Shown here: positions 29,395-57,005 of the stretch, in pieces
How positions within the stretch are numbered: the stretch's first letter is position 1
Layout: every line of letters begins with the position of its first letter
Origin: Rebecca billardiae RCC1528
Taxonomy: Eukaryota; Protista; Haptophyta
Direction: 5' to 3'
NCBI GenBank assembly: GCA_965240325.2
Contig: OZ251242.1
Location: 930,001 to 994,000, forward strand
DNA length: 64,000 nucleotides
Notes under the pieces: generated by a model
What the model was told of the DNA's origin: nothing
What the model saw: the letters and a program-made list of their open reading frames with translations, nothing else
Database searches by the model: none
Position numbers and translations under genes: made by a program

Positions 29395-32300
29395 CTACTT
29401 GAAGTGAAACTGAAAGGGGCCAGCAGCAGGGCCAGGGTTGTCGGCCGTTGGGTCATCAAAGTGAAACCCGCCGCCGCCTCCGCCCGCGGCGGGCCCGGAG
29501 CCGAACATGAGGTCGGCGAAGGGGCTCTTGCCCCACTTGGGCGGCTTGGAGCCCGTGCCGTCGTCGCCCTCGCCGAAGACGTCGGCGTCGTCCTCGTCCT
29601 TGTCCTTCACCACCTCGTCCAGGCTGCCCCAGAGCTTCGTCACGTCGATGCGATCGTCCGGCAGGCCGTCGTCGTGGTCGGCGGCGCCGCCGCCGTCCCT
29701 CGGCGCCGCCGCGCCCAGGCCGTCGCTGAGCTCGCTGTCGCCGCCGTCGCTGCTGCTGCTGGTATCGTCGTCGTCGGCGGCGGCGGATGCGGCGGCGCCG
29801 CCCGCTGCCGCGCCGCCACCGGCGCGCGCGGCTGCCGCCGGCGCGCCGCTCTCCGCATCATCGCCGACCGGGCCGAGCACGCTCGCGAGGCCGCGCGCCG
29901 CCTCCCACGCGCCCGCGACTTGGCGCATCAGCTCCTCCTGGCGTGCCGCGGTGGGCGCCCACTTGCGCAGCATGGCGGCCGCGCTGTCCTGCGTGCGCGT
30001 CGCCTTGTACGGGTCGGCGCCTGCGCCGCGCGCGCGCGCGCCGCGCGGGGCAGGGTGTAGCGCGCGGCAGCCGGCGCGGCGCATGCGTCAGTCAGCGCAC
30101 GGATGCGCACGGCGCGAGCTGCGCGCGCGGCCGAGCGGCGCGGCTCGGCCGCGCGCGGGCGCTTGGAGCGCGGCCTGCACACCGGCTTTGATCAGCTCGC
30201 ATGCGGCCGCAACGTAGCCCGCCGCGCACGCGGCATGCAGCGGCGTGCGCCCCGACGCCGAGTGCACGTCGACGCGAGCGCCTGCGACGCGCGCGCGGGT
30301 GAGGGCCCGGCGGGTCCGGATGATCCGCGCGCGCGGCGCGGAGTCAGCGCGCCGCGCGGTGTGCGCGCGCCGCGCGGCAGCCGCCGCCAAGCCGGGACGG
30401 TGGCGCGCGCGGTGCGGGCGCGCGCGGCGCTCGTGAGTGCGCCGCTGGCGCGCGCGCGCGCGCGCGCGCGCACCGGCGGAGACCAACCTCGCGACCATCC
30501 GCGCGTGCCCCGCGCCGGCGGCGGCGTGCAGCGGCGTGCAGCGCGTCTTGGCGCCGCGCGCGTTGACGAGCGCGACGCGGATGGCCGCGCGCGCGGCGGA
30601 GATTCGATCGAGAAGACCGGCTCCGGCGGCGGCGCCCGCGCCGTCGAAGTGCAGCCGCGCGTATGGGCGCGGCGTGTGCGGCGTGCGCGGCGCGCCCGCC
30701 TCGCCGCCGTGCCGGCCCGCGCTGCCGCCGGTGCCGCTCCGCTTCGCCGAGCGTGGCTTGGGCGAGCCGCCGCCGCCCTCGGCCGCGGCCGCGGCACCCG
30801 CCCCCTCGGCCGACGCCGACGCGGCCGCGGCCGGCCGTGCCTTAGGCGTGGTCGGCCGCGCCTTCCCCGGCGTGGCGGGTCGGCCGGCGCTGACAGCGCT
30901 GCCGCGCGTGTCCGCGCGGCGCGGCGCCGCGCTGCCGCGCGTGTCCGCGCGGCGCGGCCCGGCCGAGCCGCGCGTGTCCCCGCGCCGAAGCCCGCCGCCG
31001 CCGGCCGCGCCGCCACCGCCGCCGCCGCCCGCCGGCCCTCCGCCGGCGATCCCGGTGCGCAGCTCGCGCTCGGCGATGTTGCACTCCTCCTCCACGGCGG
31101 CGAGCAGCACCTCGAGTGCGCGCATCGAGTCGGTCGCCGCGGCCGCGTGCCAGAGCCACTCGCCCGGCACCGCCGCCGACTCGTCCGCCGCGGGGACCGG
31201 CGCGCGCAGCCGCCAGTGCGCCAGCTGCATCGGCTGCCGGCCGGAGAGCGCGGCCAGGGCGTCCGCGGCCGCTCGCTCGTCCTTTGCTCTAAGCGCGTCC
31301 CAAAGCTGCCGGCCCGCGGCCTGCGCGGCGGCGTGCAGGCCCTGCGCGGCGGAGCTCAGCTCGGCCAGGCTCCCGAACGGCGTGTCCGCGTGCTTCGCCG
31401 CGAGCGCCGCGCGCAGATACCGCGGCGCCGCGCCGATGCCGTCCTCGACGAGCATGCGATGATGCGCGCTCGCCTCCGCGCGCACCGCGTCCGCGGGGAG
31501 CGCGCGCGCGTGCACGCTGACCGCACGCATGTACCAGGCCTCGGAGGATTTGGCACTCTTGTGGTAGAAGAGCGCGAGCCGCCCCTTGAGCGAGAGCTGC
31601 CCGTCGAGCAGCACCCGCGCCGGCGGCAGCGTCGCCGAGAGCTGCCCATCGACGTACGCGCGCGCCTCGCCCGCTTCCGCGTTCACAACTAGAGTGAGCG
31701 CTCTCCAGTGGTTGGAGGCCGCGCCGGGCACGCCGCCGCGCTCGGCGCGCGCGGTGCTCGACTCGAGGACGACGAGGCGCTCCGCGCGGTCGACCACGAG
31801 CTGCGCCTCCGCCTCCGCCTCCGCCATCGTCGCCTCCGCCGCGCCCTCGCCCTCGCCGCCGCCGCCGCCGCCCGCGGGCGCCGCCTGCGAGGCCTTGTGG
31901 CGCGCGGCCGCGCGCTTCGCCCAAGTGTCGAAGCCGCCCGTCGACAGCACGTTGCGCGCGCGCAGGCCGACGGACGGGATCTTGACGACGACGGTGAGCG
32001 TGTACTGGTTGAGGAACGCGCCGCCGCCGTTCTTGCGGAACGGCAGCCGCACGACCGCCGACGCGGCGCCCCACCCCTTCACGCAGCGCAGCCCGCCGAC
32101 GCGCGTGTGTTGCCACGGCCCGGTCAACTCGAGCCAGCGCGGCCCGCCCGCCTGCGTGCCCGGCGTGCCGCGCGTCAGGTCGAAGAGGCACGAGGTGCGC
32201 GTGGTGCGCGGGTTGGCCGCGACGCCGGCGCGCGCGCGGCGCATCCACTCGAAGTCGGTCTCGTCCATCTCCGCCTCCGCGCGCGCGCGCGCCGCGGCCA

Positions 32301-33303
32301 GCTCCTCCTGCTGTCGCTCCTCGAGCGCCGCCTCGCGCTGCCGCTCCGAGTCGACTGTGGCGTCGAGCAGCGCGCGCAGCTCGGCCTCCGCCTTGGGCTG
32401 CACGCGCGAGAGGCGCGCGTCGGCCGCGGCGGCGGAGGCGCGCCCGCCGCCCTCGCCCCCCGCCGCCGCGTCCGCCGCGTCCGCCGCGTTCGTCTCCTCG
32501 TCGTCCGCGCGGTCGGCGAGCGCGCTCACAAACTCGGCGTAAGTCACGTGTGCGCCGTGCGCCGCGATCGAGCGGACGAAGAAGAGGATGTCGGCGGGGG
32601 TGAGCTCGGGCAGGTCGAGCCACTCCATCGCGCCGTACATCTCCGCCAGCGAGATCAGCCCGTTCTGGTCCGCGTCGAACTTGGTGAACGCGTCGTGCAG
32701 CAGCAGGCCGCGCGTGCGCAGCGCGGCGCGCACGCGCACCGCCTGCGCGCGCTGCTTGAGCAAGCTCCACTCATCCTCGAGCGTGAAGAGCTTGGCGAGC
32801 GGCGTCTGGTCCCAGCGGCGCGCGGCGCGGCGGCGGCACGCGATCATCGACGCGAACCACAGCCGGCGGCGCGTCGGGTCCGCCGGGATCGCGCGCAGCA
32901 GCGAGTTGAGCTCGGACGGCTGGAAGTGCATGGCGCAGTCGATAAATCGGCACGAATTGTGCGCCGCGGCCGCCTGGTACTCGGTCGGCGCCGTCCAGTG
33001 CGCCGTGGCGTCGAGCACGGCGTCGGAGGCGGCGACGCAGCGCAGCGCGAGGGCGACGCGGCGCTTGGGCACCACGCCCTGCCCGCTCGCCTGCCGCATG
33101 TGCATCGCGCACCGGATCGTCTCCGCCTCGGCCAATGAGAGCACGGCCCTTATCCTGCCATCCTCCTCCGCGCGGAAGACTCCGGAAGTCAGGACGGCGC
33201 GCAGCTGCTCAAAGGAGAGCGAGGCGCCGGCCGCGCGGCGGGCGAGCTCGTCGGTGGTCTCGGCCTCGGAGGGCACGCCGCCGCGCACCGGCGCGCCCGC
33301 CTC

Positions 33304-33340
<37 letters not shown>

Positions 33341-35700
33341 GCCGCCGCGCCGCGCGCGCCCGCCGCCGGGTGGCTGTTGCGTCGGGAGCGCTGGCGCGCG
33401 GCGCGCGTGCCGGCGGCGCGCAGCAGCTCGCGCGCCTCGAGCTCGCTGAGCGCGACGTCGGGCTCGGCGCGCAGCGTGGACACCGCCTCGGCCGCGTCGA
33501 ACACGCCCAGCCCCTGCGTGTCCAGCAGCCGCACGATCCGGTGCACCGCGCGCCGCCTTCGCAGCAGCCCCTCGCGCGAGCCGTCGCCGACCGCGCGCTG
33601 CTGAGCGTCGTTGAGCGCGATCATCTCTGCGGCGTGCACCGTCGCGCCGACGGCGGCGTCGAGCAGCTGCTCGAGCGGGCGCGAGGCGTACTCGTCGTCC
33701 GCGGGCTGCGCGCGCGCGCGCGCCGAGCCGCGGCCCTCGCCGCCACGTCCGCCGGCGCACGGGCAGCAGCCCGGCGCGCGCGCGCGAGAGGCGTCGTCGA
33801 CGTCCGACGGTGGCGGCGGGCGACTGGATGGCGCGCGCGTCGCCCGCACGCTCACCGCGCGCGAGGTGGCCTTCTTGGCGGGCGCGCCGCGGCGTGCGGC
33901 GGCCAGCCTGAGCTGCGGTGCGCCCTCCCACCCCGACGCCGCCGCGCGGAGCAGCTCGCGCAGCTCCTCGTCCGTCAGCGCCACGTCCTCCGCCGAGCGC
34001 AACGCGGCGACCAGCTCCGCCGCCTCGAACGCGCCCGAGTCGTCGACGTCCAGAAGCCGAAGCGCCGTGCCGAGCCGCTCCTGCTGCGCCGGGGAGAGCT
34101 CGGCGGGGCGCGGCGCGGCGGGCGCGAGCGCGGACGTGTCGGGCACCCAGTCGAGCGAGCACACCACGTTCTTCAGCCGGCGCTCGCCGCGCCACTTCAG
34201 GTCGAAGTGGTTGCGGCTCACCAGCAACCACTGTGGGAACGGCAGCGGCGCGCGGCCGTGCAGCGCAAACTTGGCCGCGGGGAACACGGAGCCTCGCGCC
34301 TCGAGCGCGCGCGCGTCGGCGAGGAGCTCGATGGGCCAGCGCTCGGCCTCCTCGCCGTCGCGCGCGTACGCCAGGTCGGCGTACCGCTCCATCTCGATCT
34401 CCTGCTCCTGCTCCTGGTCCTGCTCGCGCTCCGCCTCCGCCTCCTGCTCTCGAGATTGCTCGGTGTCGAGCTCGAGCAGAGCACGCTCGGAGCCCTCGAC
34501 GGCGGCGAGGATCTCCGAGACGATCTGGCGCTCCTCGGGCGTGCGCACGTAGTCGGCGAAGCCCTCCGCGCGCTCCGCGAGCACCGCCGCGTACTCCTGC
34601 CGCTCGGGCACCCCCGACGGCACCTCCGTCTCCACCTTCTCCAAGAAGACGTCGAGCGCGCGCCCAAGGCTCGCGCGCAGCTCAATCGATCGGCGGCGCG
34701 AGCGCGAGCCGGCGGCGGCGCGCCCGCCGCCGGCCGCGCGCGCGGAGGGCCGCGCGGAGGAGGCGGGATCGTGCAGGATCGACTCGACGAGCGCGAGCCG
34801 CGCCGTCCCGTCGCCCTCCGCGCGCAGCAGCTCGAGCCGCTCCGACGCCTCGAAGAACGGCAGGCTGGTGCCCTTCCGCAGGCCGACGGCGCGCGCGCGC
34901 GACACGAGCCGAGCGAGCGCGCTCGCGTCGCGCAGCTGGACCGCGCGGCGCAGCTCGTCCTCGAGGGCGGTGCGCGGCTTCTGCTCGCGCCACGGGAAGC
35001 GCTCCCACGTGGGCAGCGGGCTCACGCCGTGCGAGCGCGCCAGCTCGCGCAGCTGCTCCTCGTGCCGCGCCTTGAGCGCGGCCACCTCGAGCGCGCGCGC
35101 GCTCAGCCGGCGCGCGGTCAAAGCGTGCTGCTCACGCCTCGGCGCGAGCACGTGCAGCGCTGAGGCGTGGTCGACGGTGGCGACGAGCCACGCGACGAGC
35201 GCGCGCTCGGCGCGCGAGATCGGCGGCGGCTCGCTCGGCTCGCTCAGCTGCGACGTCGAGAAGTACCACAGCCCGCCGAATGAGTCGCCCCCAGCGCTCC
35301 AGGCCGCCTTGGCGTTCAGACGACCGTCGTCGAAGTAATCTTCCGGACGGAGCCGCGCGCGCGGCACGCCCTCCTCGTAGTCGCCGTCGTCGTACGCGAC
35401 GTCGTACACCGTACCCGCCTCGCTCCCGCCCTCGTACTCGTCCGACGGGTGCACCGCCACGATGTCGCCCGGGTACCACCGGCCGTACCCCTTCCAGTTG
35501 CCGACCACCCTCTCGCCGTCGTCGTAGTCGTAATCGTCGGGATCAAAGTCGTCGTCGTCGTCGTCGTCGTCCTCGTCGTCGTTGGAGCCGGAGGCGGAGT
35601 CGTCGTCGGAGCCGGAGCCGTCGGAGTCGGTGTCGCCGTCGCTCGGCTCGGACGTGGTGGGCGACGTGCCGCCGGCGGGCGCGGCGGCGGCGGGCTCGGC

Positions 35701-35735
<35 letters not shown>

Positions 35736-38700
35736 CCTTTGCTGCATCCGCCTCGGCTTTGGCCGCCGCGCGCAGCTCGCGCGAGACGACCGCCGCGGCC
35801 GGCGCGAGCTCCGAGCCGCTCACCATCGCCACCGCGAGCTCCGCCGCGCTCGCGCTCACCTCCACGCCCGCCGCGCGCCCCGCGAGCCACCGCGGATCCT
35901 CGAGCGCGCGGACGGCGCGGCTCGCGGCCGGCAGCTCGAGCAGCAGCAGGGTCGCCTCGTCCTCGTCGCCGTGTGCGCGCTGCAGCGCGGCGATCGCGGC
36001 GGCGCGCGGGACGGGCGAGCCGCGCTGGCGCAGCTGCTTCCGCAGCGCGCGCAGCGCGAGCGCGTCCACGTCGGACGGCAGCGAGCCCGCGCCGATCCCC
36101 TCCGCGGCGCGCACCTTGGCGTCGAGCTCGTCGTGCGTCTTGGCAACGTCGGCGCGCACACTCTCGAGCGAGCGCTCCTTGTGCGCCAGCTCGCGCTGCC
36201 AGTCGAGCAGCGCGCCGAGCACGCCGGCCCAGGTGCACAGCACCTTCACGCTGGCGAACTCGCTCGCCGCGTTCTTCCCGCCGCCGCGCGAGGGCGCCTC
36301 CGCCGCGCGCGCCGCCCGCAGGCCGAGGCTCGCCAGCGCCGACACGAAATCATCCGGCAGCTGCGAGGCGACGCCGCGCGCGGAGCCGCCGCCGCCGCCG
36401 CCGCCGTCGTCGTCGTCGTCCGCTTCGGCGGCGTCAGAGCCGACGTTCTTGCCGATCAGCGCGACGGTGAGCTTCTTGAGCTGCGTGACGAAGCGCACCG
36501 CGCTCGCCGCGTCCACGCGGTCCCCGCCAAACCCAACCGCGCGCCGGAATCGCACGGCGAGCGGGTCGGCCGCGGCCGCGGCGCGCGAGCCGTAGCCATC
36601 TGCCGCTGAGATACCGGCCTCGCCGCCGAGCGGGGCGCCGACGTCGGCGGCGAGGTCGAAGACGACGAGGACGAAGGAGCACGCCTCGCGCGCCGCGTCG
36701 TCCGCCTCGATCCGCGCCGCGTCGCGGCACAGCCCCTCGAGCGAGAGGCGCAGCCCGGGAGCGAGCTCGTTGAAGACCGAGCCCAAATTGCTTCGGAGCT
36801 CGGGGCCGCGCGCGTGCGCCGCCTCCACGTCGCCCTCGAGCATCGCGGCGAACTGGCGCAGGCGGAGGAGGCGCGACTGCGCGGCCTCGAGCGCGTCCGA
36901 CGCGGCGTCGCCCGCCTCGCCGCCCGCCTGCTCCTCCTCCGCGGGCGACCAGCGCGGCCGCGCGCCGGCCGCGCCGCTGCCGCCGCCGCCGCCGCCGCCG
37001 CCGGACGCGCCTGTCGCCGGCTCGGCCGCGGCGGCCGCGTCCTCCTCGTCGCCCGGCGCGTAGTAGCCCGCCTCGACGGCGGCGCGCGCGACGGCGAGCA
37101 CGTCGGTGAGCCACGCCGAGTCGCTCACGTCGCCGCCGCCCTCGTCGCCGCCCGCCTCGCCCACGCCGAGCAGCGCGCACAGGCACTCGCACGCGCGCGC
37201 GAGCGTCGCGGTCGACTCGGTGCGAGCGGTCGCGCGCTCCGCTTCGTCCGAGGCATCGGCGAGGCGCGAGAGGGCGAGGACCCAGTTGTGCAGCGCGCGC
37301 GCGGCGGCGCCGCCGCCGAGCTCGGCCGCGCTCGGCTTCGCGTGCGCCGCCGCGTACTTCTGCACCGCGCGCGCCTGCTGCGGGCTCAGCGCGAGCGCGT
37401 CGACGCGCGCCGCGCGCGCGCCGAGCGGCAAGCTTAGTAACCGCTGAGTAACGGATTGCCAGCCCGGCTTGAGCTCGAAGAGCGCGCAGAGGACGTCGCC
37501 GAGCGCGCGCATCGTGGGCGTGGGCAGCAGCGTCTCGGCGAGCGCGTCGAGCGCGCCGCGCGACAGCGCGCGCAGCCCGTCCATCGCCTCGCGCAGGCCG
37601 CGCTGCGCGGCGCCTAGCGCCTCGGCGACCGCCGGCGGCACCGGCGGCGGGCGCGAAAACGCTTGGAGCTCGGCCGCGTCGTCGGCCGCGAGCTCGCGCA
37701 GGGCGCGCGCGGCGACGGTGGCGAGGCCGCGGAGCGGGCGCATCCGCGCCTCGTGCATCGCGAGCGCGCGCCCGGCCGCGCGGTGCGCGCGCTGCTGCGC
37801 CTTGAGCTCGCGCGCGCGCCCCTTGTGCGCGCGCGCCGCCTCCTCCCAGCCCGCGGCCAACACGAACAGGCGCGCGCCGTCGCGCGAGATGACGGAGCCG
37901 TCGGCATCGACGAGGACGACGGTCCAGGGCGAGGCGCCGCCGATGTCGAAGGTCTGGCGGAGCAGCGCGCGGCGCGACTTGTGCGCGAACGGCACGGCGA
38001 GCCACGGCATCCCGCGGAACTCGGCGGGCGAGGCGGTGCGCGAGACGAAGACGATCTCGATCGAATCTGCATGCGCCGCGTACGCCGCCTTGAGAGCGGA
38101 GAGCAGCCGCGCGCCCGCCGCCTCGGCGAGCTTCGAGTCCTCGCCGGCGGCGGTGGAGAAGAAGAGCGCGACGACCTTCCCCGCGATCGCGTCGCGCGTC
38201 GCCGTCCCCGTGCTCCCCGAGACGAACGCCGTGCCGATCGCCTCGAGCACGAAGCCGCGCGAGTCCTGCACTCGAAAGTAGTGGTGGCCTGCCATCAGCT
38301 CGGCAAACGCGCGCCGCCGCCACACGTTCGCGAGGTTCTGCGCCATGAGCATGTCGTACTGCGTGGCCTCGGTGCGCATCGCGTTGAGCACGAGCCACGC
38401 CGCCACGTCGTCGAGCGAGAGCGGGGGCGCGGGCGCCGCCGGGTTGCTCGCCGCCGCCTGCTGCATGGAGAGAGCGTTGGCAGCGGGCGACACACGCTCG
38501 CCGCGGTCGAGCGGGCGGCGCCGCTGGCCCGCCTTGGCGAGCTCGCGGCACATGAGGCCCTGCACCTCGGGGGTGAGCAGCAGCGCGACGGTCTGCCCGT
38601 TGCCGATCCCGCGCATCCGGAACGCGCCCTGCGCGTAGTCGCGCCACACCATGTCCTTCCCCAGCGTGAGCATCGCGCGCGCGCCGGGCGACTGGGCAAT

Positions 38701-42265: not shown

Positions 42266-42299
<34 letters not shown>

Positions 42300-45200
42300 A
42301 TCCGCCGCCGCCGTATCCGCCGCCTCCGTACCGCGAGCGCGAGTTGAAGTGCGCGCGCGTGAGCGCGTCGGCGCGGCGCTGGAGCATGCGGTCGCGCAGC
42401 GCGCGCGACGCGGGCCCGCCGCCGTCCGTGCCGGTGAGCGCGCGCAGCTCGGCGAGCATCGAGCGCACGAGCACGCCGAGCGGCGCCTCGCTCGAGCGCC
42501 CGTCCCGCGGCACGCCGGTGAGCGTGTCGCCGCGCTGCCGGCGGGTGTCCTCAAACTGCGGCAGGAAGGGCGCGAGTTTCGGCCTGCGCGCGAGGGTGTG
42601 CAGCACCGACGCGAAGAGGCCCGGCTCGTACGCGTCGTGGAAGAGCGGCAGCAGCAGCCGCACGAGCGAGGGCCCCGACGGCGCGTCGGTCGCGAGCCGC
42701 GTGCGCAGCGAGCCCTGCGCGAGTTGATACATGAGGAGGAACCCTGCGCCGCGCAGCGTCACCTGCGGAGGGCCGCCGCTCGGGTTGATCGCGGCGACGA
42801 GCTTGAGCACCTCGTCGACGGAGGCGACGTACATGTGCATGTGCGGCACCTGCAGCTCCTCGAGCAGCGAGCGCACCCGCTCCGGGTCGCGCGCATACTC
42901 CAGCACAGACGGATCCCAGTACTCGAGCCAGCGGAGCGGGCGGCGGCGCGCAGGGATCTCGACGACGCACTCCGCCTCGCCCGCCGCCTCGGCGCGCAGC
43001 TGCGAGCGGCGGTTCTTGCAGAGCAGCACCTGGTGCAGCGCGAGCGCCTCGGTCCCGTCGCGCAGCCGCGGGTCCGCCGCGTCGACCACGCACCGGTTGA
43101 GCAGCGCGAGCTCCTCCTCCGCCGAGAGCCGACAGCTCGCGGACACGCGCGCGAGCTTGGCGGTGTACGCGGAGCATTCCTGGCTCAAGTTCCAGGGCAT
43201 CCGGACGGGCGCGTCGAGCATGACGAAGGAGAGCTTGAGCCGGCACGCGTGCGCGTCCGGGTGCATGTCCGGGCCGTGCGCGGGCGACGCCATGTGCCCG
43301 AGCAGCGTCGACTCCTCGAACGAGAGCGCCGTGTCGGTCGAGACGGTGTCGGTGAGCGCGAGCGCCGACGAGTAGGAGCGGTGCAGCAGCCGCAGCAGCA
43401 GTAGGTACAGCGCGGACGCGAGGGTGGACGCGGAGAGGAAGGAGAGCGAGACGTGGATCTTGTACGTGTAGTACGGCGCCTCGATCATCTCCAGGTACTG
43501 CCCGTTCGCGAAGAGCATCACCAGCTCCGTCGAGAAGGGCCGCGAGGCGATGGGTGTGCGCACGGGCAGGTGCGCCGGCACGAGGACTGACAGATCGCCC
43601 GACTGCGCGTGCTCGAGCAGCAGCGAGTGCGGCATGCCCGCGAGCAGCTGGACGGTGGCCGGCGTGCGCCCGCCATTGGTCACGCACATGTCCGCGTGGT
43701 CGAGCGAGAAGAGCCGCACCTTCCCGTCCGCCCCGCGCCGCGCCTCGAAGCTGAGCTTGAGGCGCGGCAGCTGCACGAGAGCCAGAGACTTGCCGTCTGC
43801 CGGCACGCGTTGCGCGACGCTCAGGTCGTCGTCCGGGCTCGCCACCGCCGGAGCGCGCGCCCAGGCGAGCACGTGCGCGAGCTGCTCGAGCCGCACGAGC
43901 AGCTCGGCCAGCGACGCGAGCGACGAGCCCGCCGGCGCGTTGAGCAGGTCGAGCAGCACGAGCTCAGCATCCGTGTACTCGCCTGGTTCGCGCGGCGCGT
44001 CGAGGCCGCCGCCGTCCGCGCGCGCGCGCGCCTGCTCGCCGCCGCCGCCGGCCGCGTGCGCCTCGTCGCCGCCGCCGCCGCCGGCGGCGGCGGCGCTGCC
44101 AGCGCCGCTGCCTCGCTCGAACTCGTTCACGAGCCCGAGCGAGTCGAAGGCGCGGTCGAGCAGCAGCGGCAGCAGCTGCGCGGCGCGGCGCGCGCGGCTG
44201 GCCGTCTTGCCGCGCGCGCCGCCCTTGGCTGCGCGCGCGCCGCCCGCGCGCTCGCCGCCAAGGGGCTTGGGGTCGACCATCTCGACCGCGCGCGCGGCGG
44301 TGCGCGCGTCGCCCGCGCGGCCCACGAGCGCCGCCACGCGCAGCGCCGCGCCGAACGGGCACTCAAACGGCCCGCGCAGCAGGCCGTGCCGACGGAGGTA
44401 CTCCTCGGCGGCGGCGACGACGATGGCCACCTCGGCGCGGCGGCGGCGCAGCCTCGCCGCCGGGCGGCGGCGCACGATGGCGACGCACGGCGGCAGCGCG
44501 AGCGGGCTCTCCGCGTCGGCCGCCGCGCGCGCCGCCGCGCTCGCCGCCGCGGGCGTCCCCGGCACGAAGCCGCGCGCGCCCGCGCTCGCAACGTGCGCCC
44601 CGAGCTGAAGGGACACCGTGAGAACGTGCCGCTCGCCGCGCCGCAGCGGGTAGCCTCGGATCAGGTCGGACTCGTCCTGCCAGAAGGCGTGCGAGGCGAG
44701 CAGCGCGTCGGGCAGCACGCCGCGCAGCAGCCGCGGCGGCAGGAACGTTTCCGTGCCCAGCGAGAGATTCTCGTCCACCGTCCACTCGCGCGTGATCACC
44801 GCCGAATGCGGCACCGAGTCCGAGGCCGCGTAGGGGTGTCCCGCACCGTGCCGCTCCCACGGCGGCCACGGGTGCGAGCGCGGGTCAGGCGCGGGCTGCA
44901 GCGCGGCGAGGCAGAAGCGGCTGTCCGAGGTGTACTCGAGCCGGCGGTAGTGCCGCCGCCCGTGGCTCTCCAGTCGGTACGCCTGAACCATCCGCCGCTC
45001 GCGATACACAAAGAACTCCCGGAATATTCCGGTGGTGCCCGGCAGGCAGCCAATCAGATACGCGACCGTCGCGTCCGCCGGCAGCGCCGCCTCCGGCAGG
45101 TAGAGCTCCAGCGGCTCGGGCAGCGTGAGGTACGCCTCGCGCACGGGCTCGAACACCGCCGGCAGCCACGCTTTCTCCTGCGCGCGCGCGCGCGCGCGCC

Positions 45201-46284
45201 GAGCGCGCGGCCGCGCCGCAGCGGCGCGAGAGGGCGGTGGCGCGTGAGCGCGCGCGAGCGCACCGCGGCCGCAGGCGCGCGCAAGGGCGCGCGGGGCGCG
45301 CGGGCGGGCACGGCGCGGCGCGGCGCGCGGCGCCGTGCCGTGGGGAAGAGCTCGCCCGGGAAGTACGGCCGCCACAGGTCGGACGGCACCTCGCGCTCGT
45401 CGGGGCTCCACCACGCCACGTCGTGCCCGCGCCCGACAAGACGATACTCGGTGCGGTGGGTCGCGACAGAGAGGATGGAGGCCTGCATCGAGACGGAGCC
45501 GAAGAGGGCGCGCACGTCCGGGTGCTGCGCGACGGCGGGCGGGAGCGCCTGCGGGTGCGACGCGCGCAGCGTGAGCTGCATCAGCTGCGCGTCGATCTCC
45601 ACCGCAAGCTCGTCGTCCAGCACGGAGCTGACGCCCGTCTCCGGCGCGGCGCCGGCCGAGGCGCCGCGCTCGCCCGCGTCGCGCAGCCGCCTCGTGCCGT
45701 CCACGTCGTCGGCGGCGAAGGAGCGCTGCGTGTCGGGCGGGCCGCTGCGCGAGCCCTGCCCCGAGGCGCGGCCGCCCGCGCCCGCTGCGCCCGGCGAGCG
45801 AGGCCCGCCCTCGGCCGCGCCACCGTCGGCGTCGTCGTCCGAGCGCGCGCCCCGCGCGCCGCGGCCGCCCGCGCACGGCCCGAACAGGGACTCGAAGAGC
45901 GCCCAGGCTTTTGGCGAGGCGTTGGCGCGCGCGCCGCGCGCCGCGCCGCCCCCGTCGTCGCCGCCACTCGCGCCCTCGGCCGCGCCGCCGGGCTCGCTGC
46001 CCGGGCGCAACGAGCCCACGGCGACGCCGGGCGCGACCGCGCGATCGCCCGCGCCCGCTCGGTCGGCGCCGCCGCCGCCGCCGTCCGCGGAAGCGCCGCC
46101 GCCGTGCGCCGCGGCGGCGCGGCCACCCTGATAAGCCGAGTGCACGGCGAAGCGGCCGACGCTGCGCCGGCCGGCGACGTAGGCCCAGCGGTTGCGCGGC
46201 GGCGGCTCTGCTGCCACGGCCGCCCCGTCGTCGCCGCCGCCGCCGCGCGCGCCGCCGCCCGCCTCATCGGAGCCGCCGCGCTCC

Positions 46285-46330
<46 letters not shown>

Positions 46331-49051
46331 TGCCGCCGCCGCCGCCGTCGTCCTCGTCCTCGCCGCCGCCCGTCGAGTCGAGGTCGAGCGGCCCTGTGGT
46401 CGCGGCGACGCGGACGACGGTCTCCATCACCTCGTCGAGCTCCGCCTGCGTCGCGCGCGTGCGCAGCCAGATCACCAGCGCGCGCCGCGTGTGCTGCAGC
46501 GCCTCGTACAGCTCGTGCTCCGGGATGGAAAGCGCCGAGCCGCGCGCCGAGCCGGGGCCGTTGCCGTTGCCGGCGTCGCGCGTGTCGAGATTCCACTCGT
46601 GGCGGGTGACGAGGAAGACGAAGGCGGCGACGAGCTCGCGCGCGCGCGGCTCGTCGATCTGGCCCTGCCCGAGCGAGCGCGCGCCGAGCAGCACGTGCGC
46701 GTGCAGCGCGCACATCCGCTTGGTGTTTTCATCCAGCACCCACTCCTCCGAGCGCGCCGCGACCTCGGCAGCGAGCTTCGCGTACCAGCCTCGCACGATG
46801 GCGGCGAGCGGGCCGTGCAGCGCGGCGCGGAGCTCGGCGCGGAAGGCGGAGAGCTCGGGCAGCGCGGCGAGCAGCTGCTTCCGCGGCACCCCGCGGCACT
46901 GCTCCGCGCGGAGCGTCGGGTGCCGCCCGTGGCCCAGCCGGAGCAAGAAGGTAAGATGCGCCTCGACGCGCGCCGCCAGCCGGATCGTGTAAAGGATCAC
47001 CGGCGCCGTGGAGGAGACGGCGTGGCCGGTGTCGAGCTCGACGGCCTGGCGCACGAGGCGGACGAGCGCGTCGCGCAGCAGCGCAGGCGAGTGCACCAGC
47101 TCGTTCAGCAGCAGCCCGTGCGCCGTCGCGAGCAGCTGCGGCTCGGAGGTGGGCACGTCGACAATGTCGCCGCTCGAGTGCCGGAGCGGCAGGTGCGCGC
47201 CGGGTTCGAACAGGATCCCGTCGAGCGCGTCCTGCAGCGGCTGCGACTGCAGCGCGTGGATGCGGTCGTTCTGCGAGAAGAAGGAGAGGACGAGCGGGAT
47301 GCGCATGTACGGCACCGTGAGGAACGAGAGCAGCAGCTCCGAGTCGTGCTGCCCCAGCGCCTTGGCGTTGGTCACGTGCAGCGAGCCAAAGTCCGGCAGG
47401 TCCCACATGTGCAGGACGTCGTCCTCCGAGTCCGCGGGGAACGGCTGCGTGTACTCGGACGGGCTGGAGAGCGGGGCGAAGCGGCGGAGCGGGCCGCCGC
47501 CGGGCGGCGGCCGCGTGATCGCGCTGAGCTCGATGCCGAACGCCTTCACCACGAACGCGCCGTCCTGAAAGCCCCACGCCAGCTCGGCCTGCCGCTGACT
47601 GTAGGGCGAGCCGCGGTACCGCGGCACGCCGTCCGCGTGCCGCTTCGGGTTGGTGAAGAGCTTGGCGTAGAAGCAGATGTCGCGGTAGCAGGCGAACTCG
47701 GGGTGGTTCTTGATGAGCAGCCCGCTGTTGTCGCACACGTACCCCGGGCTCTCGCCCACGCCCTTCGGGTACGCGAGCCGCGAGCACAGCCCGCTCAGGA
47801 AGCGGTGCAGCGAGCGCTCCAGCCGGTGCGTGCGCTCGAACGCAAAGATTGGATCGCGCCGCTCGGCCACGCCCTCGAAGTAGTCGAGCGCGCGGCAGCG
47901 CGCGACGCCGAGCTCGGGCGTGAAGCACAGGATCGCGGGGGACTGCTCGGCGAGCACGCCCGCCGTGGGCGCGTACCCACGGCCCGGGTTGCCCAGCTCG
48001 GCGCCGACGCCGCCGCCGGCGAGGTGCAGGGACACGGGGGACGGCATGTCCGTCGCGACCCGCCGGATCACGGCGTCGGCGATCGCCGCGACGCAGAGCG
48101 GCACGATGGTGCGCACGGCGTCGATCGCGCGCGTGTGCTGCACCGAGGCCACCGCCGCGGCGAAGTGCTCCACCAGCCGCTGCAGCAGGATCAGAATGTC
48201 GAGCTGCGTGTCGTAAGTCATCGGCGTGTCCGCCCACACGCACGCGCGCCGCGCCGCCGCCGCCTTTGCGCCGCCGGTGGGAGTGGTGGCGGCGGTGGGC
48301 GAGGGCAGCGGGGCGGCGCGCGCGCCGTCCGCCGCGCCGCCCGCGCGGCGGCGCGCGGGCGACTCGGGCACGGGCAGCAGCACGGTGAACGTGTGCTGCA
48401 GCATCGCGAGCTGCAGCTGCGTCGCGTTCTTGACCGAGTGCGTCTGCACCGCGAGCAGCGTGCAGAGCCGGTCGCAGTGTCGGAGCGCCTCGACGGCGGT
48501 GGCGAGGTCGGGGATGCGGGTGGGCTGCTGCAGCAGGTCGATGGGGAGGTACAGCGCCAGCTCCTTCTGGCTGCCCGGGTCGACGGGCCCGCGGCGGAGC
48601 AGCCGCTCCGCGAGCGCGTGCAGCGGCGGCGTCGCCGGCGGCTTGGCGAGCCGCCACGGGAACTGAAGCGAGTGGCGTGTCAGCAGGCGGACGCCGTCCG
48701 CCGAGATGATCGAGCGGTCGGACGCGTCGAGCAGCAGCACGCGCGGGATGTCCGAGACGTCGTACGCCTGCGCCAGCTCCGCGCGCTCGCGCGACGCGCC
48801 GAACGGCACGCACAGCCACTCGGGCATCCCCGCCGCGTACGCCGCGTGCGCGTCAGCTTCAGTGTCACACGAGACGTAGACCACTTCGAACGCGTGCCCG
48901 AGCGCGCGCAGCTTGGTGCGCACGGAGCGGAGCTGCGCGGAGAGGCGGACGCACGGCACGCACCACGAGGCGCCAAAGTACAGCGCGACGACCTGCGTGC
49001 CGCCGAGCGCCGCGCTCGTCGGCTCGGCCGCCGAGGGCTGCTGCGCCTCGC

Positions 49052-49096
<45 letters not shown>

Positions 49097-51923
49097 AGCG
49101 CTCGAGCGATTCTCCGAGCAGCTGCGGCCACGTGCGCGTCGCGAGCGCGCGCTCGCTCTCGTTGAGGACGAGCGGCGGCGGCACGTCGGTCGCGGGGCCG
49201 TCCGCCGAGGGCAGCGCGCGCAGCTGCCCCTCGATCCTCTCCAGCTGCTCAGTGAGAGCTGACATCTCAGCAACACTGAGCGGCGCGCCGCGCGGCGCCG
49301 CGGCGCCAGCCGGCGCCGTGGCGCGCGCCGCGCGCGCGCGCGCGGCCTCGCGCTTCCGCCGCGCCATGTACGCGGTGGAGGGCGGGCGCAGGCCCGGGGG
49401 CGGCTCGCCGGCGACCACGCGGCCGAGCGAGTAGGGCGAGTCGGCCGACACGTCGGGGAGCGCCTGTCGCAGCGCGCGAGGACCGTGTGGTGCGTGGTCG
49501 GCGCCGCCGGCTGGCGCGCCGCCGCCACCGCCGCCGGCGCGCGAGGAGGGCAGCCCTCCTTCGGGCGGCGTGAGCGGCTGGTCGTCGGCGTCGTCGGCCG
49601 CGCCCGCCGGCGCCAGCGGCAGCGGCGCGAGCTTCGCCGCGTGGTGCGCCACCGACTCGCAGCCGATCTGGACGATCCGGCGGTCGGCCGAGCTCGCGGC
49701 GCGGACAAAGCCGAGATCATGCGAAGCCATCCGCAGCAGCTCGATGCGGATCATGAGCGTGATGCGCTTGCGCGAGCCGAGGCGCACGCCGCGCAGGGCG
49801 AGCAGGTAGCGCAGCGCGTGCACCAGGCTGCGGTACGCGCCCGTCGACGCGCTCATCTGCGCGCTCATGAACGGCGCGCCGCCGTCGGCGGTCGGCTCGT
49901 CGTCGGGCAAGCGCGCCGCGTCCGCCGCCGCTTCGGCCTCAGCGAGGTGCTCCTCCGTCGGCCGGCCAATCAGGAAGGAGATGAGCACGTCGTAGAGCAC
50001 CGTGCTCGGGCGCACGCGCTGCTGCCCGTCGCCGTTCGTCGCGGCGTAGCACGCCAGCGTCCAGAACGCCTCGTCCGTCGCGCGCTCCCACGGCACACGC
50101 ACGCCGAGGCACGTGCGGTGCTTGAGCTTGGGCGGCGCGGCGCGCGCCGGGTGAGCGGACAGCTGGCGGGGGTCGGTGACGGCGAGGACGAAGCGGCACA
50201 TCGACGGGTCGGCGCGCTCGCGGTCGAGCGCGATGAGCACGGGCTTCCCGCCCAGCATGAACGGGATCAGCGCGCACTCGCCCGCCGCCGTGCGCGAAAC
50301 GTGCCGAGCAATCTCAGCCACCGCGACTCGAAGGTGTCCGGCCGGTAGGGCCATGCTAAGTCTGTGCGCGAGCCGCTTCGACTGCTCGAGGGCGAGGAGG
50401 AGGGAGTTGGCGGACTGCCAGTCGGCGTGGGAGAGCTCGCGGCCGAAGAGCTTCGCCAGGTCGGCGTCGGTGAGCACGCGCCGCCACACCAGCGCGAGCA
50501 CCTCGAGCGACGACGCGGCGGACGGCGGCACGCCCGCGCCTTCGATGCAGTGGTCGGCGAGCGCCGCGCCAAATGCTGGGTGCAGCCAGACGGGCGGCGG
50601 CCGGCCGTACAGGGGCTGCAGCGACATGTTGGCGGCGAGCGACTCGCGGAAGGCGTCGCGCTCGTCCGGCACGTCCGCCTCCGCGCGGATCGCGCGCAGC
50701 TCCGCCGCCACCTCGCTCTCGTCAGCCCAGCGCGCCGCGCGCACGGTCACGTATTTGAGCGCGACACCGCACGCCTCACGCTCGCCGCCCTCGCCGGGCA
50801 GGAGCGCGCACGCGCGCGCGTTGAGCGCGAAGGGGACGACGCCCTGCTGCTGCTTGGGCGGCGGGGGCGCGGCGGGCGGCTTGCCGCCGCGCGCGTACCC
50901 GCGCGCCGGCGCCTCGCGCGCGCTCTCGCCCTCCTCCTCCTCCGCCGCCGCATCCTCCGCTGCCGCCGTCGCCGCGTCGTCACCGCCCTCCTCCGCGTCG
51001 CCGCCGCCGCCGCCACCGGCGGCGGCGGCGGCGGAGGCCTTGTCCGCGCCCGCGCCGTCCGCGCCGCGGCCCGGCTTGCGCGCCTCGAGCTTCACCTCCG
51101 CGCACTTCCGCCCGTCCACGTACGTCGTCAGCTGCTTGCCGCGCCGCGTGACCACGACCCACGCCCAGCGACCGGGCTTGATCGAGACGCCGGCAGCACC
51201 CGGCGTGCCGAGCGCGCCGACGCCGCCGTTCGGAAAGACCTGCACGGCGTCGTGCGCGGCGGCGGCGGCGGCGGCCGCGCCGCCCGCGCCGCCCGTGAAC
51301 AGCGGCAGCGCCGTCGTCGGCAGCGTCTCCAGCCGGATCGCGAGCACGACCGTGTACGTCTGAAGCTGGCCTTCCGAGTCTATCACGTATCGATCGAAGC
51401 CGTGCTCGGCGGTGAGCGAGACGGCGAGGTGCGAGGCGGCGTCGGCGGGCATCTGGAGCGAGCACGTGCCGTCCTCGTCCTCCAGCACCGCCACCTCGCC
51501 GCCCGACGTCAGCGTGAAGCCGTCCGGTAGCCGCGTCGTCCCCGGCTCCGCGGTGCGAAAGTCCGCGGTGGCCTGCGGCTCGTAGTAGCGCGCGTGCTCC
51601 TCGAGGCGCTCGTCGGTGGGGCGCGCGCCGGCCTCCTCGGCGGGGACGGGGCGCGCAGGGCGCGCGAGCCGCGCCGCCGCGCCGCCGTCCTCCGCCTCCT
51701 CGTCCGCGGCCGCGGGCGCGCCCCACGCGGGCGCGCCCGCGTCGCGCACCGCCTCGGCTTCATACGGAAGCGGCGCGTAGCGCGAGGCCTTCGTGACGTC
51801 GGCGTGGTCGAAGTCGGGCGCCTCCTGCCGGCCCGCGCCCTCCTCGAACCCAGCGCCGCCCTTGGCGCCGCTCTTCCCGGGCTTGGCGCCCGGCTTCTTG
51901 CCCGGCTGCCACGACGGCGCCAT
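29395..51923 (-). CDS. Giant ~7,300-aa DUF3638/DUF3645 P-loop (SF2/SecA-like) multidomain protein; exons 51923-45339, 45177-30474 (possible in-frame intron 33855-33706), 30281-30183, 30020-29395
   Basis: Core motifs QMLMGGGKTTVISP, VMDEVD, LAIPFVGKDVPARASEFAHPDV, GFSGTP, ALIDTGAL, DQIHTTGMD and QGAFRMR. Also thioredoxin (YFGASWCVPC), EF-hands (DVDDSGAFEAAEL, DADQNGLISLAE), Tudor, LamG-like and ankyrin (TPLHAA) motifs. The 2289-aa and 5262-aa ORFs join in phase via a GC-AG intron. Confidence 0.85.
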
Positions 51924-56963: not shown

Positions 56964-57005
56964 AAATCCGGGCTTGCGCGGGCTCCGGCCGCAATCCATC
57001 GACAA

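What the first reader, a model, noticed from the sequence alone, without database searches (positions are those of the whole stretch)
29395..51923. ~7,300-aa DUF3638/3645 ATPase giant integrating redox, calcium, ubiquitin and microtubule-type modules
Seen, N to C: LamG-like (~51400-51090); nucleoredoxin-type Trx with intact WCVPC (49000-48655); SF2/SecA-like P-loop core (40900-38600); a second Trx lacking CxxC (38190-37870); dynein-stalk-like helices; UBA-like (36020-35935); Tudor (35520-35345); EQ-repeat (~34430); three EF-hand-like loops (34060, 33520, 32680); LamG-like (32010-31520); ankyrins (30570-30000). Established: DUF3638/DUF3645 proteins are functionally uncharacterised. Inference: a single-chain sensor-motor or signalling machine. 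It is the best candidate here for an undescribed system, either cytoskeletal (flagellum/haptonema) or NLR-like defence.
Basis: partly seen in the sequence, partly recalled or inferred. Interest (0 to 1): 0.82.

Follow-up and report, generated by a model that had tools for sequence, protein, structure and literature searches.

The report
Giant SecA-like ATPase with dynein-type module
This is one real gene for a 7,337-residue protein of a widespread but unstudied family of giant eukaryotic ATPases, and in this algal branch a motor most like the bacterial protein-pusher SecA sits on one chain with redox, calcium-binding and dynein-type microtubule-binding parts.

Summary
Window 29395-51923 (minus strand) is one four-exon gene of 22,011 coding bases (7,337 codons). 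Fifty-seven homologues align without offset across the frame-shifting GC-AG intron.

Pfam confirms DUF3638 and DUF3645, a WCVPC thioredoxin, EF-hands and ankyrins. The second, CxxC-less thioredoxin and both LamG-like domains score just under Pfam cut-offs but recur in relatives. Tudor and UBA assignments are weak.

New here:
- The ATPase core folds confidently, and SecA is its nearest solved structure (Z 17.6-18.1; next family 15.2-16).
- A conserved N-terminal domain matches the Legionella AnkD/LegA15 and AnkH effector domain (Z 17-18; next 5.4), but it lacks a conserved cysteine.
- The "stalk-like helices" include a true homologue of the dynein microtubule-binding domain. A profile of this unit and 12 relatives hits dynein heavy chains at 1e-19.

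The same domain order occurs in a Chrysochromulina-type protein, so this is a haptophyte subfamily. No paper found describes the family's function.

A flagellar role and an NLR-like role are both unsupported. The "ubiquitinyl hydrolase 1" database name is also unsupported.

The scan's notes report similar paralogues elsewhere in this genome. I tested the claims on this locus independently. No RNA data could be obtained.

The parts
29395..51923 (-). Whole gene: exons 51923-45339, 45177-30474, 30281-30183 and 30020-29398, with the stop codon at 29397-29395. The coding sequence is 22,011 nt, or 7,337 codons.
   Evidence: ORFs and translations; GC3 periodicity; splice sites read from the sequence; colinear homologues; length sum.
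45178..45338 (-). Intron 1, GC-AG, 161 nt. It shifts the reading frame from frame 2 to frame 0.
   Evidence: Sequence. Fifty-seven homologues span the junction; P0008 and P0010 do so with no unaligned residue on either side. A GT donor at 45389 is an alternative, but it would delete 17 residues that homologues align to.
30282..30473 (-). Intron 2, GT-AG, 192 nt, inside an ankyrin repeat.
   Evidence: Sequence. Splicing restores the ankyrin consensus ...LVSAG|ARVDVH.... Exon order is colinear with P0012.
30021..30182 (-). Intron 3, GT-AG, 162 nt. It contains the in-frame TGA at 30088-30090.
   Evidence: Sequence. Exon 4 aligns to P0012 residues 2775-2879, directly after the ankyrin repeats.
51078..51362 (-). 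LamG/concanavalin-A-like domain 1.
   Evidence: Laminin_G_3, E 6e-6, 26.9 bits (cut-off 27.6). Eight homologues align here.
49629..50588 (-). N1 domain with the fold of the Legionella AnkD/LegA15 and AnkH effector domain (cysteine-protease-like; an atypical GTPase in LegA15). It has an invariant His (50151-50153), an acidic pair and an invariant Trp (within 50061-50078). The candidate nucleophile motif is FMSAQMS (49851-49871), against the family consensus WRSPQRS.
   Evidence: AlphaFold2 model with pLDDT 83. VIA Z 17.2-18.2, rmsd 3.3-3.5 over 250-257 residues, to 7xql, 7ew8, 7kj6 and 6mca; the next match scores 5.4. ESM Atlas clusters carrying PF28177 T4SS_AnkD, TM 0.53-0.55. Column counts.
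48714..48995 (-). Nucleoredoxin/tryparedoxin-type thioredoxin domain with an intact WCVPC motif (48951-48965).
   Evidence: Thioredoxin_8 2.3e-18; tryparedoxins 8e-15; motif located.
41431..48656 (-). Family-conserved scaffold between the thioredoxin and the motor. It is interrupted by intron 1 and by low-complexity Gly/Ala stretches. Its fold was not determined.
   Evidence: BLAST coverage by 60-110 of the 120 homologues in blocks E1 1090-1850, E1 2050 to E2 200, E2 400-950 and E2 1050-1250. There is no Pfam match.
38278..41430 (-). SecA-like two-RecA ATPase core (DUF3638 at 40246-40893; DUF3645 at 39565-39663). Motifs: Walker A GGGKTT 40753-40770; DEVD 40357-40368; FSGTPS 39106-39123; HTTGMDI 38698-38718; QGAFRMRGIG 38602-38631. 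An insert of about 410 residues lies between DEVD and SGT.
   Evidence: Pfam. Forty-six-sequence alignment; all invariant columns are kept in this protein. AlphaFold2 pLDDT 85, pTM 0.82. SecA is the top match: Foldseek; VIA Z 18.1 with 514 aligned residues; unbiased wide search Z 17.6, with the first non-SecA match at 15.2.
37861..38229 (-). Second thioredoxin-like domain, without CxxC (FSTAAGEDS at 38134-38160 in its place). It is probably redox-inactive.
   Evidence: Thioredoxin_8 1e-5, covering 1-94 of 94 model positions. Tryparedoxin 5e-4. The same CxxC-less domain follows the core in P0008 (2.7e-11).
37144..37692 (-). Homologue of the dynein microtubule-binding domain, with short flanking helices.
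   Evidence: Exhaustive phmmer found 13 relatives. One of them, P0127, matches Pfam MT PF12777 at 2e-27 over the aligned stretch. A profile of this unit plus 12 relatives, without P0127, hits 81 PDB sequences; the 60 listed are all dynein stalk/MTBD regions, best 1e-19. Single-sequence searches found nothing.
35932..36021 (-). UBA-like three-helix module. The assignment is weak.
   Evidence: Pfam UBA 0.11. A 60-residue module is conserved in nine clade relatives. The profile's best PDB match is the Ddi1 UBA domain, E 0.023. UBA-clan models are the commonest weak Pfam hits among the members.
35335..35520 (-). Tudor-like domain. The assignment is weak to moderate.
   Evidence: BAHCC1-like_Tudor 0.004, Agenet 0.014 and Tudor_3, Tudor_2 and Tudor_5 from 0.06 to 0.4, all below their cut-offs. 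A similar segment occurs in P0048.
32398..34710 (-). Family-conserved C-terminal region with EF-hands. Canonical loops lie at 34015-34050 (DVDDSGAFEAAE) and 32641-32676 (DADQNGLISLAE); a degenerate duplicated loop lies at 33487-33522 (DTQGLGVFDAAE). An acidic Glu/Gln-rich stretch lies near 34430.
   Evidence: EF-hand_7 2.8e-10 and EF-hand_6 7e-7. Coverage by 64-98 of the 120 homologues. Internal duplication, 56% identity over 43 residues.
31520..32010 (-). LamG/concanavalin-A-like domain 2.
   Evidence: Laminin_G_3 9e-4. The equivalent position in P0002 scores 28.2 bits, above the cut-off. BLAST matches to P0002, P0012 and P0008.
30003..30560 (-). Ankyrin repeats, split by introns 2 and 3.
   Evidence: Ank 2e-7 and Ank_2 5e-6. 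Spliced reading. Colinear with P0012 and P0002.
29398..30002 (-). Low-complexity acidic C-terminal tail with no recognised domain.
   Evidence: No Pfam match at E up to 10. GC3 stays high in frame.

Best explanation
What is shown. This is an intact, spliced gene for a 7,337-residue member of the pan-eukaryotic DUF3638/DUF3645 family of giant ATPases. It belongs to a haptophyte subfamily with a fixed domain order: LamG, an AnkD/AnkH-like domain, a CxxC thioredoxin, a long conserved scaffold, a SecA-like ATPase, a CxxC-less thioredoxin, a dynein-type MTBD, a variable stretch (UBA-like, Tudor-like), an EF-hand region, LamG, and ankyrins. The ATPase keeps every residue that is invariant in the family. 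Its nearest solved fold is SecA, including a large insert between the DEVD and SGT motifs; from memory, SecA carries its preprotein-binding domain at that position.

What is inferred. The protein is an ATP-driven remodelling or translocating machine, not a stepping motor. It would be tethered to microtubules through the MTBD-like module. Calcium (two canonical EF-hand loops) and redox state (the WCVPC thioredoxin) would gate it. The LamG, ankyrin, Tudor-like and UBA-like modules would choose its clients. Whether the client is a polypeptide, as for SecA, or a nucleic acid or RNP, as for the next-best helicase matches, is not resolved.
For: One gene.

Family membership: Pfam DUF3638 2e-31 and DUF3645 9e-14, both above their cut-offs. 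There are 317 giant homologues, 39-60% identical in the core among the 120 listed.

Subfamily: a clade with 100% local support containing P0001, P0003, P0004, P0008 and P0010. P0008 has the same domain order, and its 90% cluster holds a Chrysochromulina tobinii protein.

Motor: model pLDDT 85. SecA is the top match by Foldseek and by two VIA searches, Z 17.6-18.1, with up to 514 aligned residues against about 335 for DEAD-box proteins.

MTBD. It occurs only in the clade.

Thioredoxins. EF-hands.

Across the family the accessory domains are recurrently ubiquitin-related (UBA, ubiquitin, MIB_HERC2, WWE, RING, NZF), redox or calcium domains. That fits a regulated machine acting on proteins.
Against: - No expression data: no RNA run was listed.
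- No experimental paper on any family member was found.
- SecA leads the helicases by only about 2 Z units, so a nucleic-acid substrate is not excluded.
- In dynein the MTBD sits on a long antiparallel coiled coil that couples it to the ATPase. Here only short helices flank it, and it lies behind an inactive thioredoxin domain. A basic position in the first MTBD helix that most clade relatives keep (Arg) is Ala in this protein. Microtubule binding is therefore untested and could be lost.
- Microtubule, calcium and redox control are all inferred from domain identity alone.
Confidence: 0.55

Rival explanations
1. It is a nucleic-acid helicase or translocase (RIG-I, DEAD-box, FANCM or Snf2-like) on a giant scaffold. 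It would act on RNA, an RNP or DNA rather than on polypeptides, with the Tudor-like module reading methyl marks on RNP or chromatin proteins.
For: DEAD-box, RIG-I/MDA5, DinG, FANCM and INO80 match at Z 14-16 over 320-360 residues, close behind SecA. A Tudor-like module is present.
Against: SecA and SecA2 take the top three places in the unbiased search and align more residues, 403-514. The large insert lies between motifs II and III, as I recall for SecA and unlike RIG-I or Snf2 (sequence). No nucleic-acid-binding domain was detected by Pfam.
Confidence: 0.2
2. It is a deubiquitinase, as the database name 'ubiquitinyl hydrolase 1' given to family members suggests. The N1 domain, related to clan CE cysteine peptidases, would be the catalytic centre.
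For: UniRef names several homologues 'ubiquitinyl hydrolase 1'. [quoted passage not shown] Weaker rows in the same search include OtDUB, a Ulp1-like protease and YopJ-family proteins. An invariant His and a conserved acidic pair are present.
Against: No OTU, Ulp or other peptidase Pfam match at E up to 0.1. No Cys is conserved in N1. The candidate nucleophile position is Ser in 23 of 34 sequences, and the nearby Cys is present in only 17 of 34 and is Ser here. The family motif WRSPQRS is FMSAQMS in this protein. LegA15, the best structural match, was shown to be a GTPase, not a protease (PMC9757750). The geometry of the site could not be inspected.
Confidence: 0.07
3. It is an innate-immunity or conflict protein (NLR-like in logic, not in fold): a conserved ATPase chassis with fast-changing sensor and effector modules, expanded into paralogues.
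For: Accessory domains vary widely between members. The stretch E2 2440-3300 has almost no detectable relatives outside the clade. Several paralogues are noted in this genome. DUF3638 proteins form a large gene family in microsporidia, and one is among the most polymorphic predicted effectors in Plasmodiophora. Legionella effectors share the N1 fold.
Against: The ATPase is not a STAND NTPase; no NACHT or NB-ARC match. The core and about 4,500 residues of scaffold are conserved across supergroups at 40-60% identity, which is more typical of a housekeeping machine. No death, TIR or nuclease effector domain is present.
Confidence: 0.1
4. It is an annotation artefact: two or more adjacent genes, or a decaying pseudogene, read together because stop codons are rare in DNA of 75-80% GC.
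For: Long spurious ORFs do occur on other frames here, up to 1,393 aa on the opposite strand. There are no RNA data.
Against: GC3 of 0.90-0.99 follows one frame throughout. Fifty-seven homologues span the exon 1/2 junction colinearly. All family-invariant residues of the core are kept. Proteins with the same order and size exist in other haptophytes: P0008 at 6,981 aa and cluster members up to 7,015 aa.
Confidence: 0.03

Closest known systems
DUF3638/DUF3645 proteins (Pfam PF12340 and PF12359), giant eukaryotic P-loop proteins of unknown function
   Same: Both Pfam domains match above their cut-offs. The core is 39-60% identical to the 120 listed of 317 homologues, which are 2,700-8,000 aa long and come from haptophytes, stramenopiles, alveolates, euglenozoans, amoebozoans, apusozoans and others. 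The conserved N-terminal, scaffold and EF-hand C-terminal blocks are shared.
   Different: This haptophyte subfamily adds a CxxC-less thioredoxin and a dynein-type MTBD directly after the motor, plus LamG and ankyrin modules. This protein also has its own internal EF-hand duplication and a diverged N1 motif.
SecA, the bacterial preprotein translocase ATPase
   Same: It is the nearest solved fold for the core: Z 17.6-18.1, with 403-514 aligned residues covering both nucleotide-binding domains and the long scaffold helix. From memory of SecA, it also shares a DEVD motif II and a large insert between motifs II and III.
   Different: About 12-14% identity. There is no SecA Pfam match and no PDB sequence match, even with a profile. 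The protein is eukaryotic, roughly eight times larger, and has no known membrane channel partner.
Dynein heavy chain stalk and microtubule-binding domain (Pfam MT, PF12777)
   Same: The unit at 37144-37692 and its clade relatives are sequence homologues of the distal stalk and MTBD of axonemal and cytoplasmic dyneins. The profile E-value is 1e-19, and the matches include isolated MTBD structures 2rr7, 3err, 5ayh and 6rza.
   Different: There is no AAA+ ring, linker or long coiled-coil stalk. The ATPase is SF2/SecA-like. This copy is too diverged for Pfam or single-sequence detection and lacks a basic residue that most relatives keep.
Legionella Dot/Icm effectors AnkD/LegA15 and AnkH/LegA3 (Pfam T4SS_AnkD, PF28177)
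   Same: The N1 domain has the same fold as their non-ankyrin domain: Z 17-18 over about 255 residues, far above every other match. ESM Atlas clusters with PF28177 match at TM 0.53-0.55.
   Different: 11-12% identity and no sequence-level match, even with a profile. The Cys that both effector papers treat as catalytic is not conserved here. The effectors are proteins of about 450 residues with an N-terminal ankyrin domain.
Nucleoredoxin and tryparedoxin
   Same: The first thioredoxin domain matches Thioredoxin_8 and tryparedoxins and has a WCxPC active site.
   Different: It is embedded in a giant ATPase. The second copy has lost both cysteines.

Membership tests
DUF3638/DUF3645 giant ATPase family | Pfam PF12340 and PF12359 both match above their gathering scores, in that order | tested here: met
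   109.3 bits (cut-off 31) and 50.9 bits (cut-off 25).
DUF3638/DUF3645 giant ATPase family | Intact Walker A, DEVD, SGT and arginine-finger-type motifs conserved in the family | tested here: met
   All invariant columns of the 46-sequence core alignment are present in this protein. The motifs were located.
SecA family | Sequence match to the SecA_DEAD, SecA_PP_bind and SecA_SW domains | tested here: not met
   No such Pfam match at E up to 0.1. A core profile finds no PDB sequence at E up to 10.
SecA family | SecA-type fold: two RecA-like domains, an insert in the first, and a long scaffold helix | tested here: met
   SecA is the top match in three searches: Z 17.6-18.1, up to 514 aligned residues, model 55-1051 against chain 38-617. 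This shows resemblance of fold, not membership.
Dynein heavy chain | AAA+ ring (six AAA modules) and linker | tested here: not met
   No dynein AAA or linker Pfam match anywhere in the protein.
Dynein microtubule-binding domain (Pfam MT) | Sequence homology to the distal stalk and MTBD | tested here: met
   A profile of this unit plus 12 relatives matches dynein MTBD regions at 1e-19 to 4e-7, including isolated MTBD structures. It is not detectable with this sequence alone.
Dynein microtubule-binding domain (Pfam MT) | Binds microtubules | not testable with these tools
   This needs co-sedimentation or localisation experiments. One basic position that relatives keep is Ala here.
Deubiquitinase ('ubiquitinyl hydrolase 1') | A recognisable DUB catalytic domain with a conserved Cys nucleophile | tested here: not met
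   No peptidase Pfam match. N1 has a protease-like fold, but no Cys is conserved in 34 sequences.
NLR / STAND NTPases | NACHT, NB-ARC or a related STAND ATPase domain | tested here: not met
   No such Pfam match. The ATPase fold is SF2/SecA-type.
Nucleoredoxin-type thioredoxin | Thioredoxin_8 fold with a CxxC active site | tested here: met
   The first domain scores 66.7 bits and has WCVPC. The second domain has the fold (26.3 bits, cut-off 27) but no CxxC.
EF-hand calcium-binding | Twelve-residue loop with acidic or polar ligands at positions 1, 3, 5 and 12 and Gly at position 6 | tested here: met
   The loops DVDDSGAFEAAE and DADQNGLISLAE fit, and Pfam gives 2.8e-10 and 7e-7. The third loop, DTQGLGVFDAAE, does not fit.
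UBA domain | Pfam UBA-clan match at or above the cut-off | tested here: inconclusive
   E 0.11, 12.8 bits (cut-off 22.4). The clade profile's best PDB match is the Ddi1 UBA domain at 0.023. Weak UBA-clan hits occur in several members.
Tudor domain | Pfam Tudor-clan match at or above the cut-off | tested here: inconclusive
   Six Tudor-clan models score from 0.004 to 1.7, all below their cut-offs.

The most novel reading that the evidence does not exclude
Haptophytes have built a second kind of ATP-driven microtubule-associated machine. A SecA-type (SF2) motor, not an AAA+ ring, has captured the dynein microtubule-binding domain and works on clients at microtubules under calcium and redox control. 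In addition, the family's N-terminal domain would be the eukaryotic counterpart, and perhaps the source, of the AnkD/AnkH domain that Legionella injects into protist hosts.
Probability: 0.25. Interest if true: 0.85.

Novelty: new variant of a known kind. Interest (0 to 1): 0.66.

Why it matters
DUF3638/DUF3645 proteins are among the largest proteins of many protists and fungi, yet no function is known for them (PMC12615304).

This locus gives three testable handles on the family:
- a motor whose nearest known relative pushes polypeptides;
- an N-terminal domain shared with two Legionella effectors whose biochemistry is disputed (protease or GTPase);
- in haptophytes, a dynein microtubule-binding domain outside a dynein, which I found in no paper searched.

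If the module binds microtubules, it would show that this domain is a portable targeting unit. It would also point to where in the cell these giants act.

Tried and rejected
Searches that found nothing:
- RNA evidence: no run could be listed for 43000-48000.
- NCBIfam: nothing useful.
- The dynein-like stretch by single sequence: Pfam at E up to 10, phmmer against PDB and the word-index protein search on E2 2440-3300 all found nothing. Only the exhaustive search followed by a profile worked. A first profile contained P0127, which is itself strongly dynein-like, so I repeated the search without it.
- The second supposed stalk unit (E2 about 2680-3035; window 36073-37137): no relative in any search. 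It remains unassigned.
- N1: the language-model atlas search gave only unnamed clusters, and a profile against PDB sequences gave nothing. Only the fold search was informative.

Ideas considered and rejected:
- A conserved catalytic Cys in N1.
- A GT donor at 45389 for intron 1, which would remove residues that homologues align to.
- Upstream ORFs at 52004-53776 as extra 5' exons. Homologues begin at the LamG domain, and the upstream ORFs look like a separate membrane-protein gene.

Other: P0127's contig is only 1.8 kb, so its context is unknown. Literature searches for DUF3638, DUF3645, DUF6606, PF12777 and 'MTBD-like' found no functional study.
Full report
**The gene**

The region holds two very long minus-strand ORFs, 51923-45054 and 45876-30088, which overlap in different frames. 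A third ORF, 30084-29395, follows a single TGA. The DNA is 72-80% GC. ORFs of several hundred to 1,393 codons therefore also occur on the other frames and the other strand, and length alone proves nothing.

Third-codon-position GC (GC3) settles the frame. It is 0.90-0.99 in frame 2 from 51923 to about 45300, and in frame 0 from there to about 29400.

The frame change is explained by a 161-nt GC-AG intron at 45338-45178. With this intron removed, 57 homologous proteins align colinearly across the junction. P0008 and P0010 do so with no unaligned residue on either side.

Two GT-AG introns (30473-30282 and 30182-30021) interrupt ankyrin repeats. Removing them restores the repeat consensus and eliminates the TGA at 30088-30090. 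The three terminal exons align in order to P0012.

No RNA run could be listed, so splicing rests on homology and sequence signals.

Clearly confirmed by Pfam:
- Thioredoxin_8, 2e-18, with WCVPC at 48951-48965.
- DUF3638, 2e-31, and DUF3645, 9e-14.
- EF-hand_7 and EF-hand_6.
- Ankyrin repeats.

The first thioredoxin is of the tryparedoxin/nucleoredoxin type, 8e-15 against solved tryparedoxins.

The second thioredoxin covers the whole Thioredoxin_8 model at 1e-5, 26.3 bits against a cut-off of 27. It matches tryparedoxin at 5e-4 and has FSTAAGEDS where the CxxC should be. The Chrysochromulina-type relative P0008 has the same cysteine-less domain at the same place, 2.7e-11.

The two LamG-like domains score 6e-6 and 9e-4, just under the cut-off. 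Relatives share them, and in P0002 the second one passes the cut-off.

The Tudor assignment is weak, but six Tudor-clan models agree, the best at 0.004.

The UBA assignment is weak. Pfam gives 0.11. The 60-residue module is conserved in nine clade relatives. Their profile's best solved match is the Ddi1 UBA domain at 0.023, and UBA-clan models are the commonest weak hits among the members.

Two of the three EF-hand loops are canonical. The third belongs to an internal duplicate (56% identity over 43 residues) and has lost its ligands.

**The family**

A search with the core found 317 proteins. The 120 listed are 2,700-8,000 residues long and 39-60% identical in the core. Named sources include Diplonema, Eutreptiella, Bodo, Aureococcus, Chrysophaeum, Chromera, Vitrella, Durusdinium, Amorphochlora, Pelomyxa and Thecamonas.

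The accessory domains vary, but the same few themes recur:
- thioredoxins;
- EF-hands;
- LamG and ankyrins;
- many ubiquitin-system modules (UBA, ubiquitin, MIB_HERC2, WWE, RING, RanBP-type zinc fingers).

BLAST coverage shows a shared skeleton of about 4,500 residues: an N-terminal domain, long scaffold blocks, the core, and a C-terminal EF-hand region. The stretch E2 2300-3500 is nearly specific to close relatives.

On a tree of the core, this protein falls in a clade with 100% local support together with P0001, P0003, P0004, P0008 and P0010. Aureococcus is the next branch.

P0008 (6,981 aa) has the same domain order as this protein. Its 90% cluster includes a Chrysochromulina tobinii entry and full-length members of up to 7,015 aa. 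The architecture is therefore a conserved haptophyte subfamily, not a one-off.

Papers that mention DUF3638 only list it. A 2025 proteogenomics paper states that its mechanism is undefined.

**The motor**

A 46-sequence alignment of the core has about 100 invariant columns, all present here. They include GGGKTT, DEVD, FSGTPS, HTTGMDI and QGAFRMRGIG.

The AlphaFold2 model is confident, with pLDDT 85 and pTM 0.82. Neither the sequence nor the profile finds any solved relative.

By fold, SecA comes first in three searches:
- Foldseek: SecA entries have the highest TM-scores, though DinG, SRCAP and MDA5 sit among the best E-values.
- Re-alignment of Foldseek's matches: Z 18.1 with 514 aligned residues for SecA in the SecY complex. 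DEAD-box and RIG-I proteins follow at Z about 16 with about 335 aligned.
- An unbiased search of 48,161 chains: SecA 17.6, the SecA motor domains 15.7, SecA2 15.2, then FANCM 15.2 and DinG 15.1.

The roughly 410-residue insert between DEVD and SGT is, as I recall, where SecA carries its preprotein-binding domain. This point rests on my knowledge of SecA, not on a tool result.

Membership of the SecA family is not met at the sequence level.

**The N-terminal domain**

The block E1 340-800 is shared by about half of the homologues and is the N-terminus of several.

Its model (pLDDT 83) matches one thing only: the non-ankyrin domain of the Legionella effectors LegA15/AnkD (7xql, 7ew8, 7kj6) and AnkH (6mca). 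The scores are Z 17.2-18.2, rmsd 3.3-3.5 Å, over 250-257 residues. The next row scores 5.4. ESM Atlas clusters carrying Pfam T4SS_AnkD match at TM 0.53-0.55.

The AnkH paper describes this domain as cysteine-protease-like, with a His-Asp-Cys triad superposed on the clan CE peptidase XopD (PMC6712400). A later paper shows that LegA15 binds and hydrolyses GTP using the same cysteine (PMC9757750).

In the eukaryotic family a His, an acidic pair and a Trp are invariant or nearly so, but no cysteine is conserved. The residue at the start of the helix where a nucleophile would sit is Ser in 23 of 34 sequences. The family motif WRSPQRS reads FMSAQMS in this protein. I placed that nucleophile position from secondary structure and spacing only, because I could not read model coordinates.

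The database name "ubiquitinyl hydrolase 1" is therefore not supported.

**The dynein-type module**

Searched alone, the stretch after the second thioredoxin matched nothing in Pfam, the PDB or the word-index protein search.

The exhaustive HMMER search then found 13 cluster representatives, all aligning to E2 2481-2715:
- Several are fragments that run from a Thioredoxin_8 domain into the module.
- One, P0125, runs from the module on to EF-hand, LamG and ankyrin domains.
- One, P0127, carries two tandem copies that match Pfam MT, the dynein microtubule-binding stalk, at 2e-27 over the very residues that align to this protein.

A profile of this unit and 12 relatives, built without P0127, hits 81 solved sequences. 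The 60 listed are all dynein heavy chains at their distal stalk and MTBD, with E-values from 1e-19 to 4e-7. They include the isolated MTBD structures 2rr7, 3err, 3j1t, 5ayh and 6rza.

It is thus a marker of the haptophyte subfamily, and the homology is established.

Function is not established. The long coiled coil that couples dynein's MTBD to its motor is absent, and one basic position that most relatives keep is Ala here. A second "nested" unit further on has no support.

**Interpretation**

The most likely reading is a regulated, ATP-driven remodelling or translocating machine whose motor works like SecA's. In haptophytes it would be tethered to microtubules, with calcium and thiol-redox inputs and several client-binding modules.

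The steps that are shown are the gene structure, the family and subfamily membership, the folds and the homologies. The steps that are inferred are the substrate, the tethering and the regulation.

The main rival is a nucleic-acid helicase reading, because the Z scores are close. The deubiquitinase, NLR-like and artefact readings each fail a direct test.

**Relation to earlier scan notes**

The notes report three other DUF3638/DUF3645 giants in this genome. Two are said to have a SecA-like motor and a dynein-type module. I treated these as leads and tested both claims on this locus with my own searches. They hold here too. I did not see the N1 match to the Legionella effector domain in those notes.

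Noticed in passing
window 52267-53776 (-): A separate upstream gene in at least two frames, so probably spliced. It encodes a hydrophobic protein with a weak Bestrophin_2 match (E 0.007, below the cut-off). Its last ORF ends 344 nt before the giant gene's ATG.
   Followed up: partly
window 56750-63091 (+): An intact 2,113-codon Ty1/copia-type polyprotein ORF (RVT_2 3e-51, integrase core, SH3-like domain) with a long Pro-rich N-terminal part.
   Followed up: partly
window 33358-34200 (-): An internal duplication of an EF-hand-containing segment inside the giant protein (56% identity over 43 residues). The second copy has lost the calcium ligands. Homologues such as P0001 have no such extra segment between the two conserved C-terminal blocks.
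   Followed up: partly
L001 291-1670 (P0127, NCBI assembly GCA_046766295.1): A 459-residue predicted protein made of two nearly identical tandem dynein-MTBD-like units (Pfam MT 2e-27) on a 1.8-kb contig. It is either a stand-alone MTBD protein or a fragment of a larger gene; the context is unknown.
   Followed up: partly
window 49629-50588 (-), compared with PDB 7xql, 7ew8, 7kj6 and 6mca: The domain of the Legionella effectors AnkD/LegA15 and AnkH that has been called protease-like or GTPase has a eukaryotic structural counterpart at the N-terminus of the DUF3638/DUF3645 giants. Because Legionella lives in protists, a host origin of the effector domain is conceivable but untested.
   Followed up: partly
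window 45178-45338 and 30021-30473 (-): The three introns are short (161-192 nt), about as GC-rich as the exons, and full of (GC)n runs. Codon-position GC therefore does not reveal in-frame introns. One of the three uses a GC donor.
   Followed up: no
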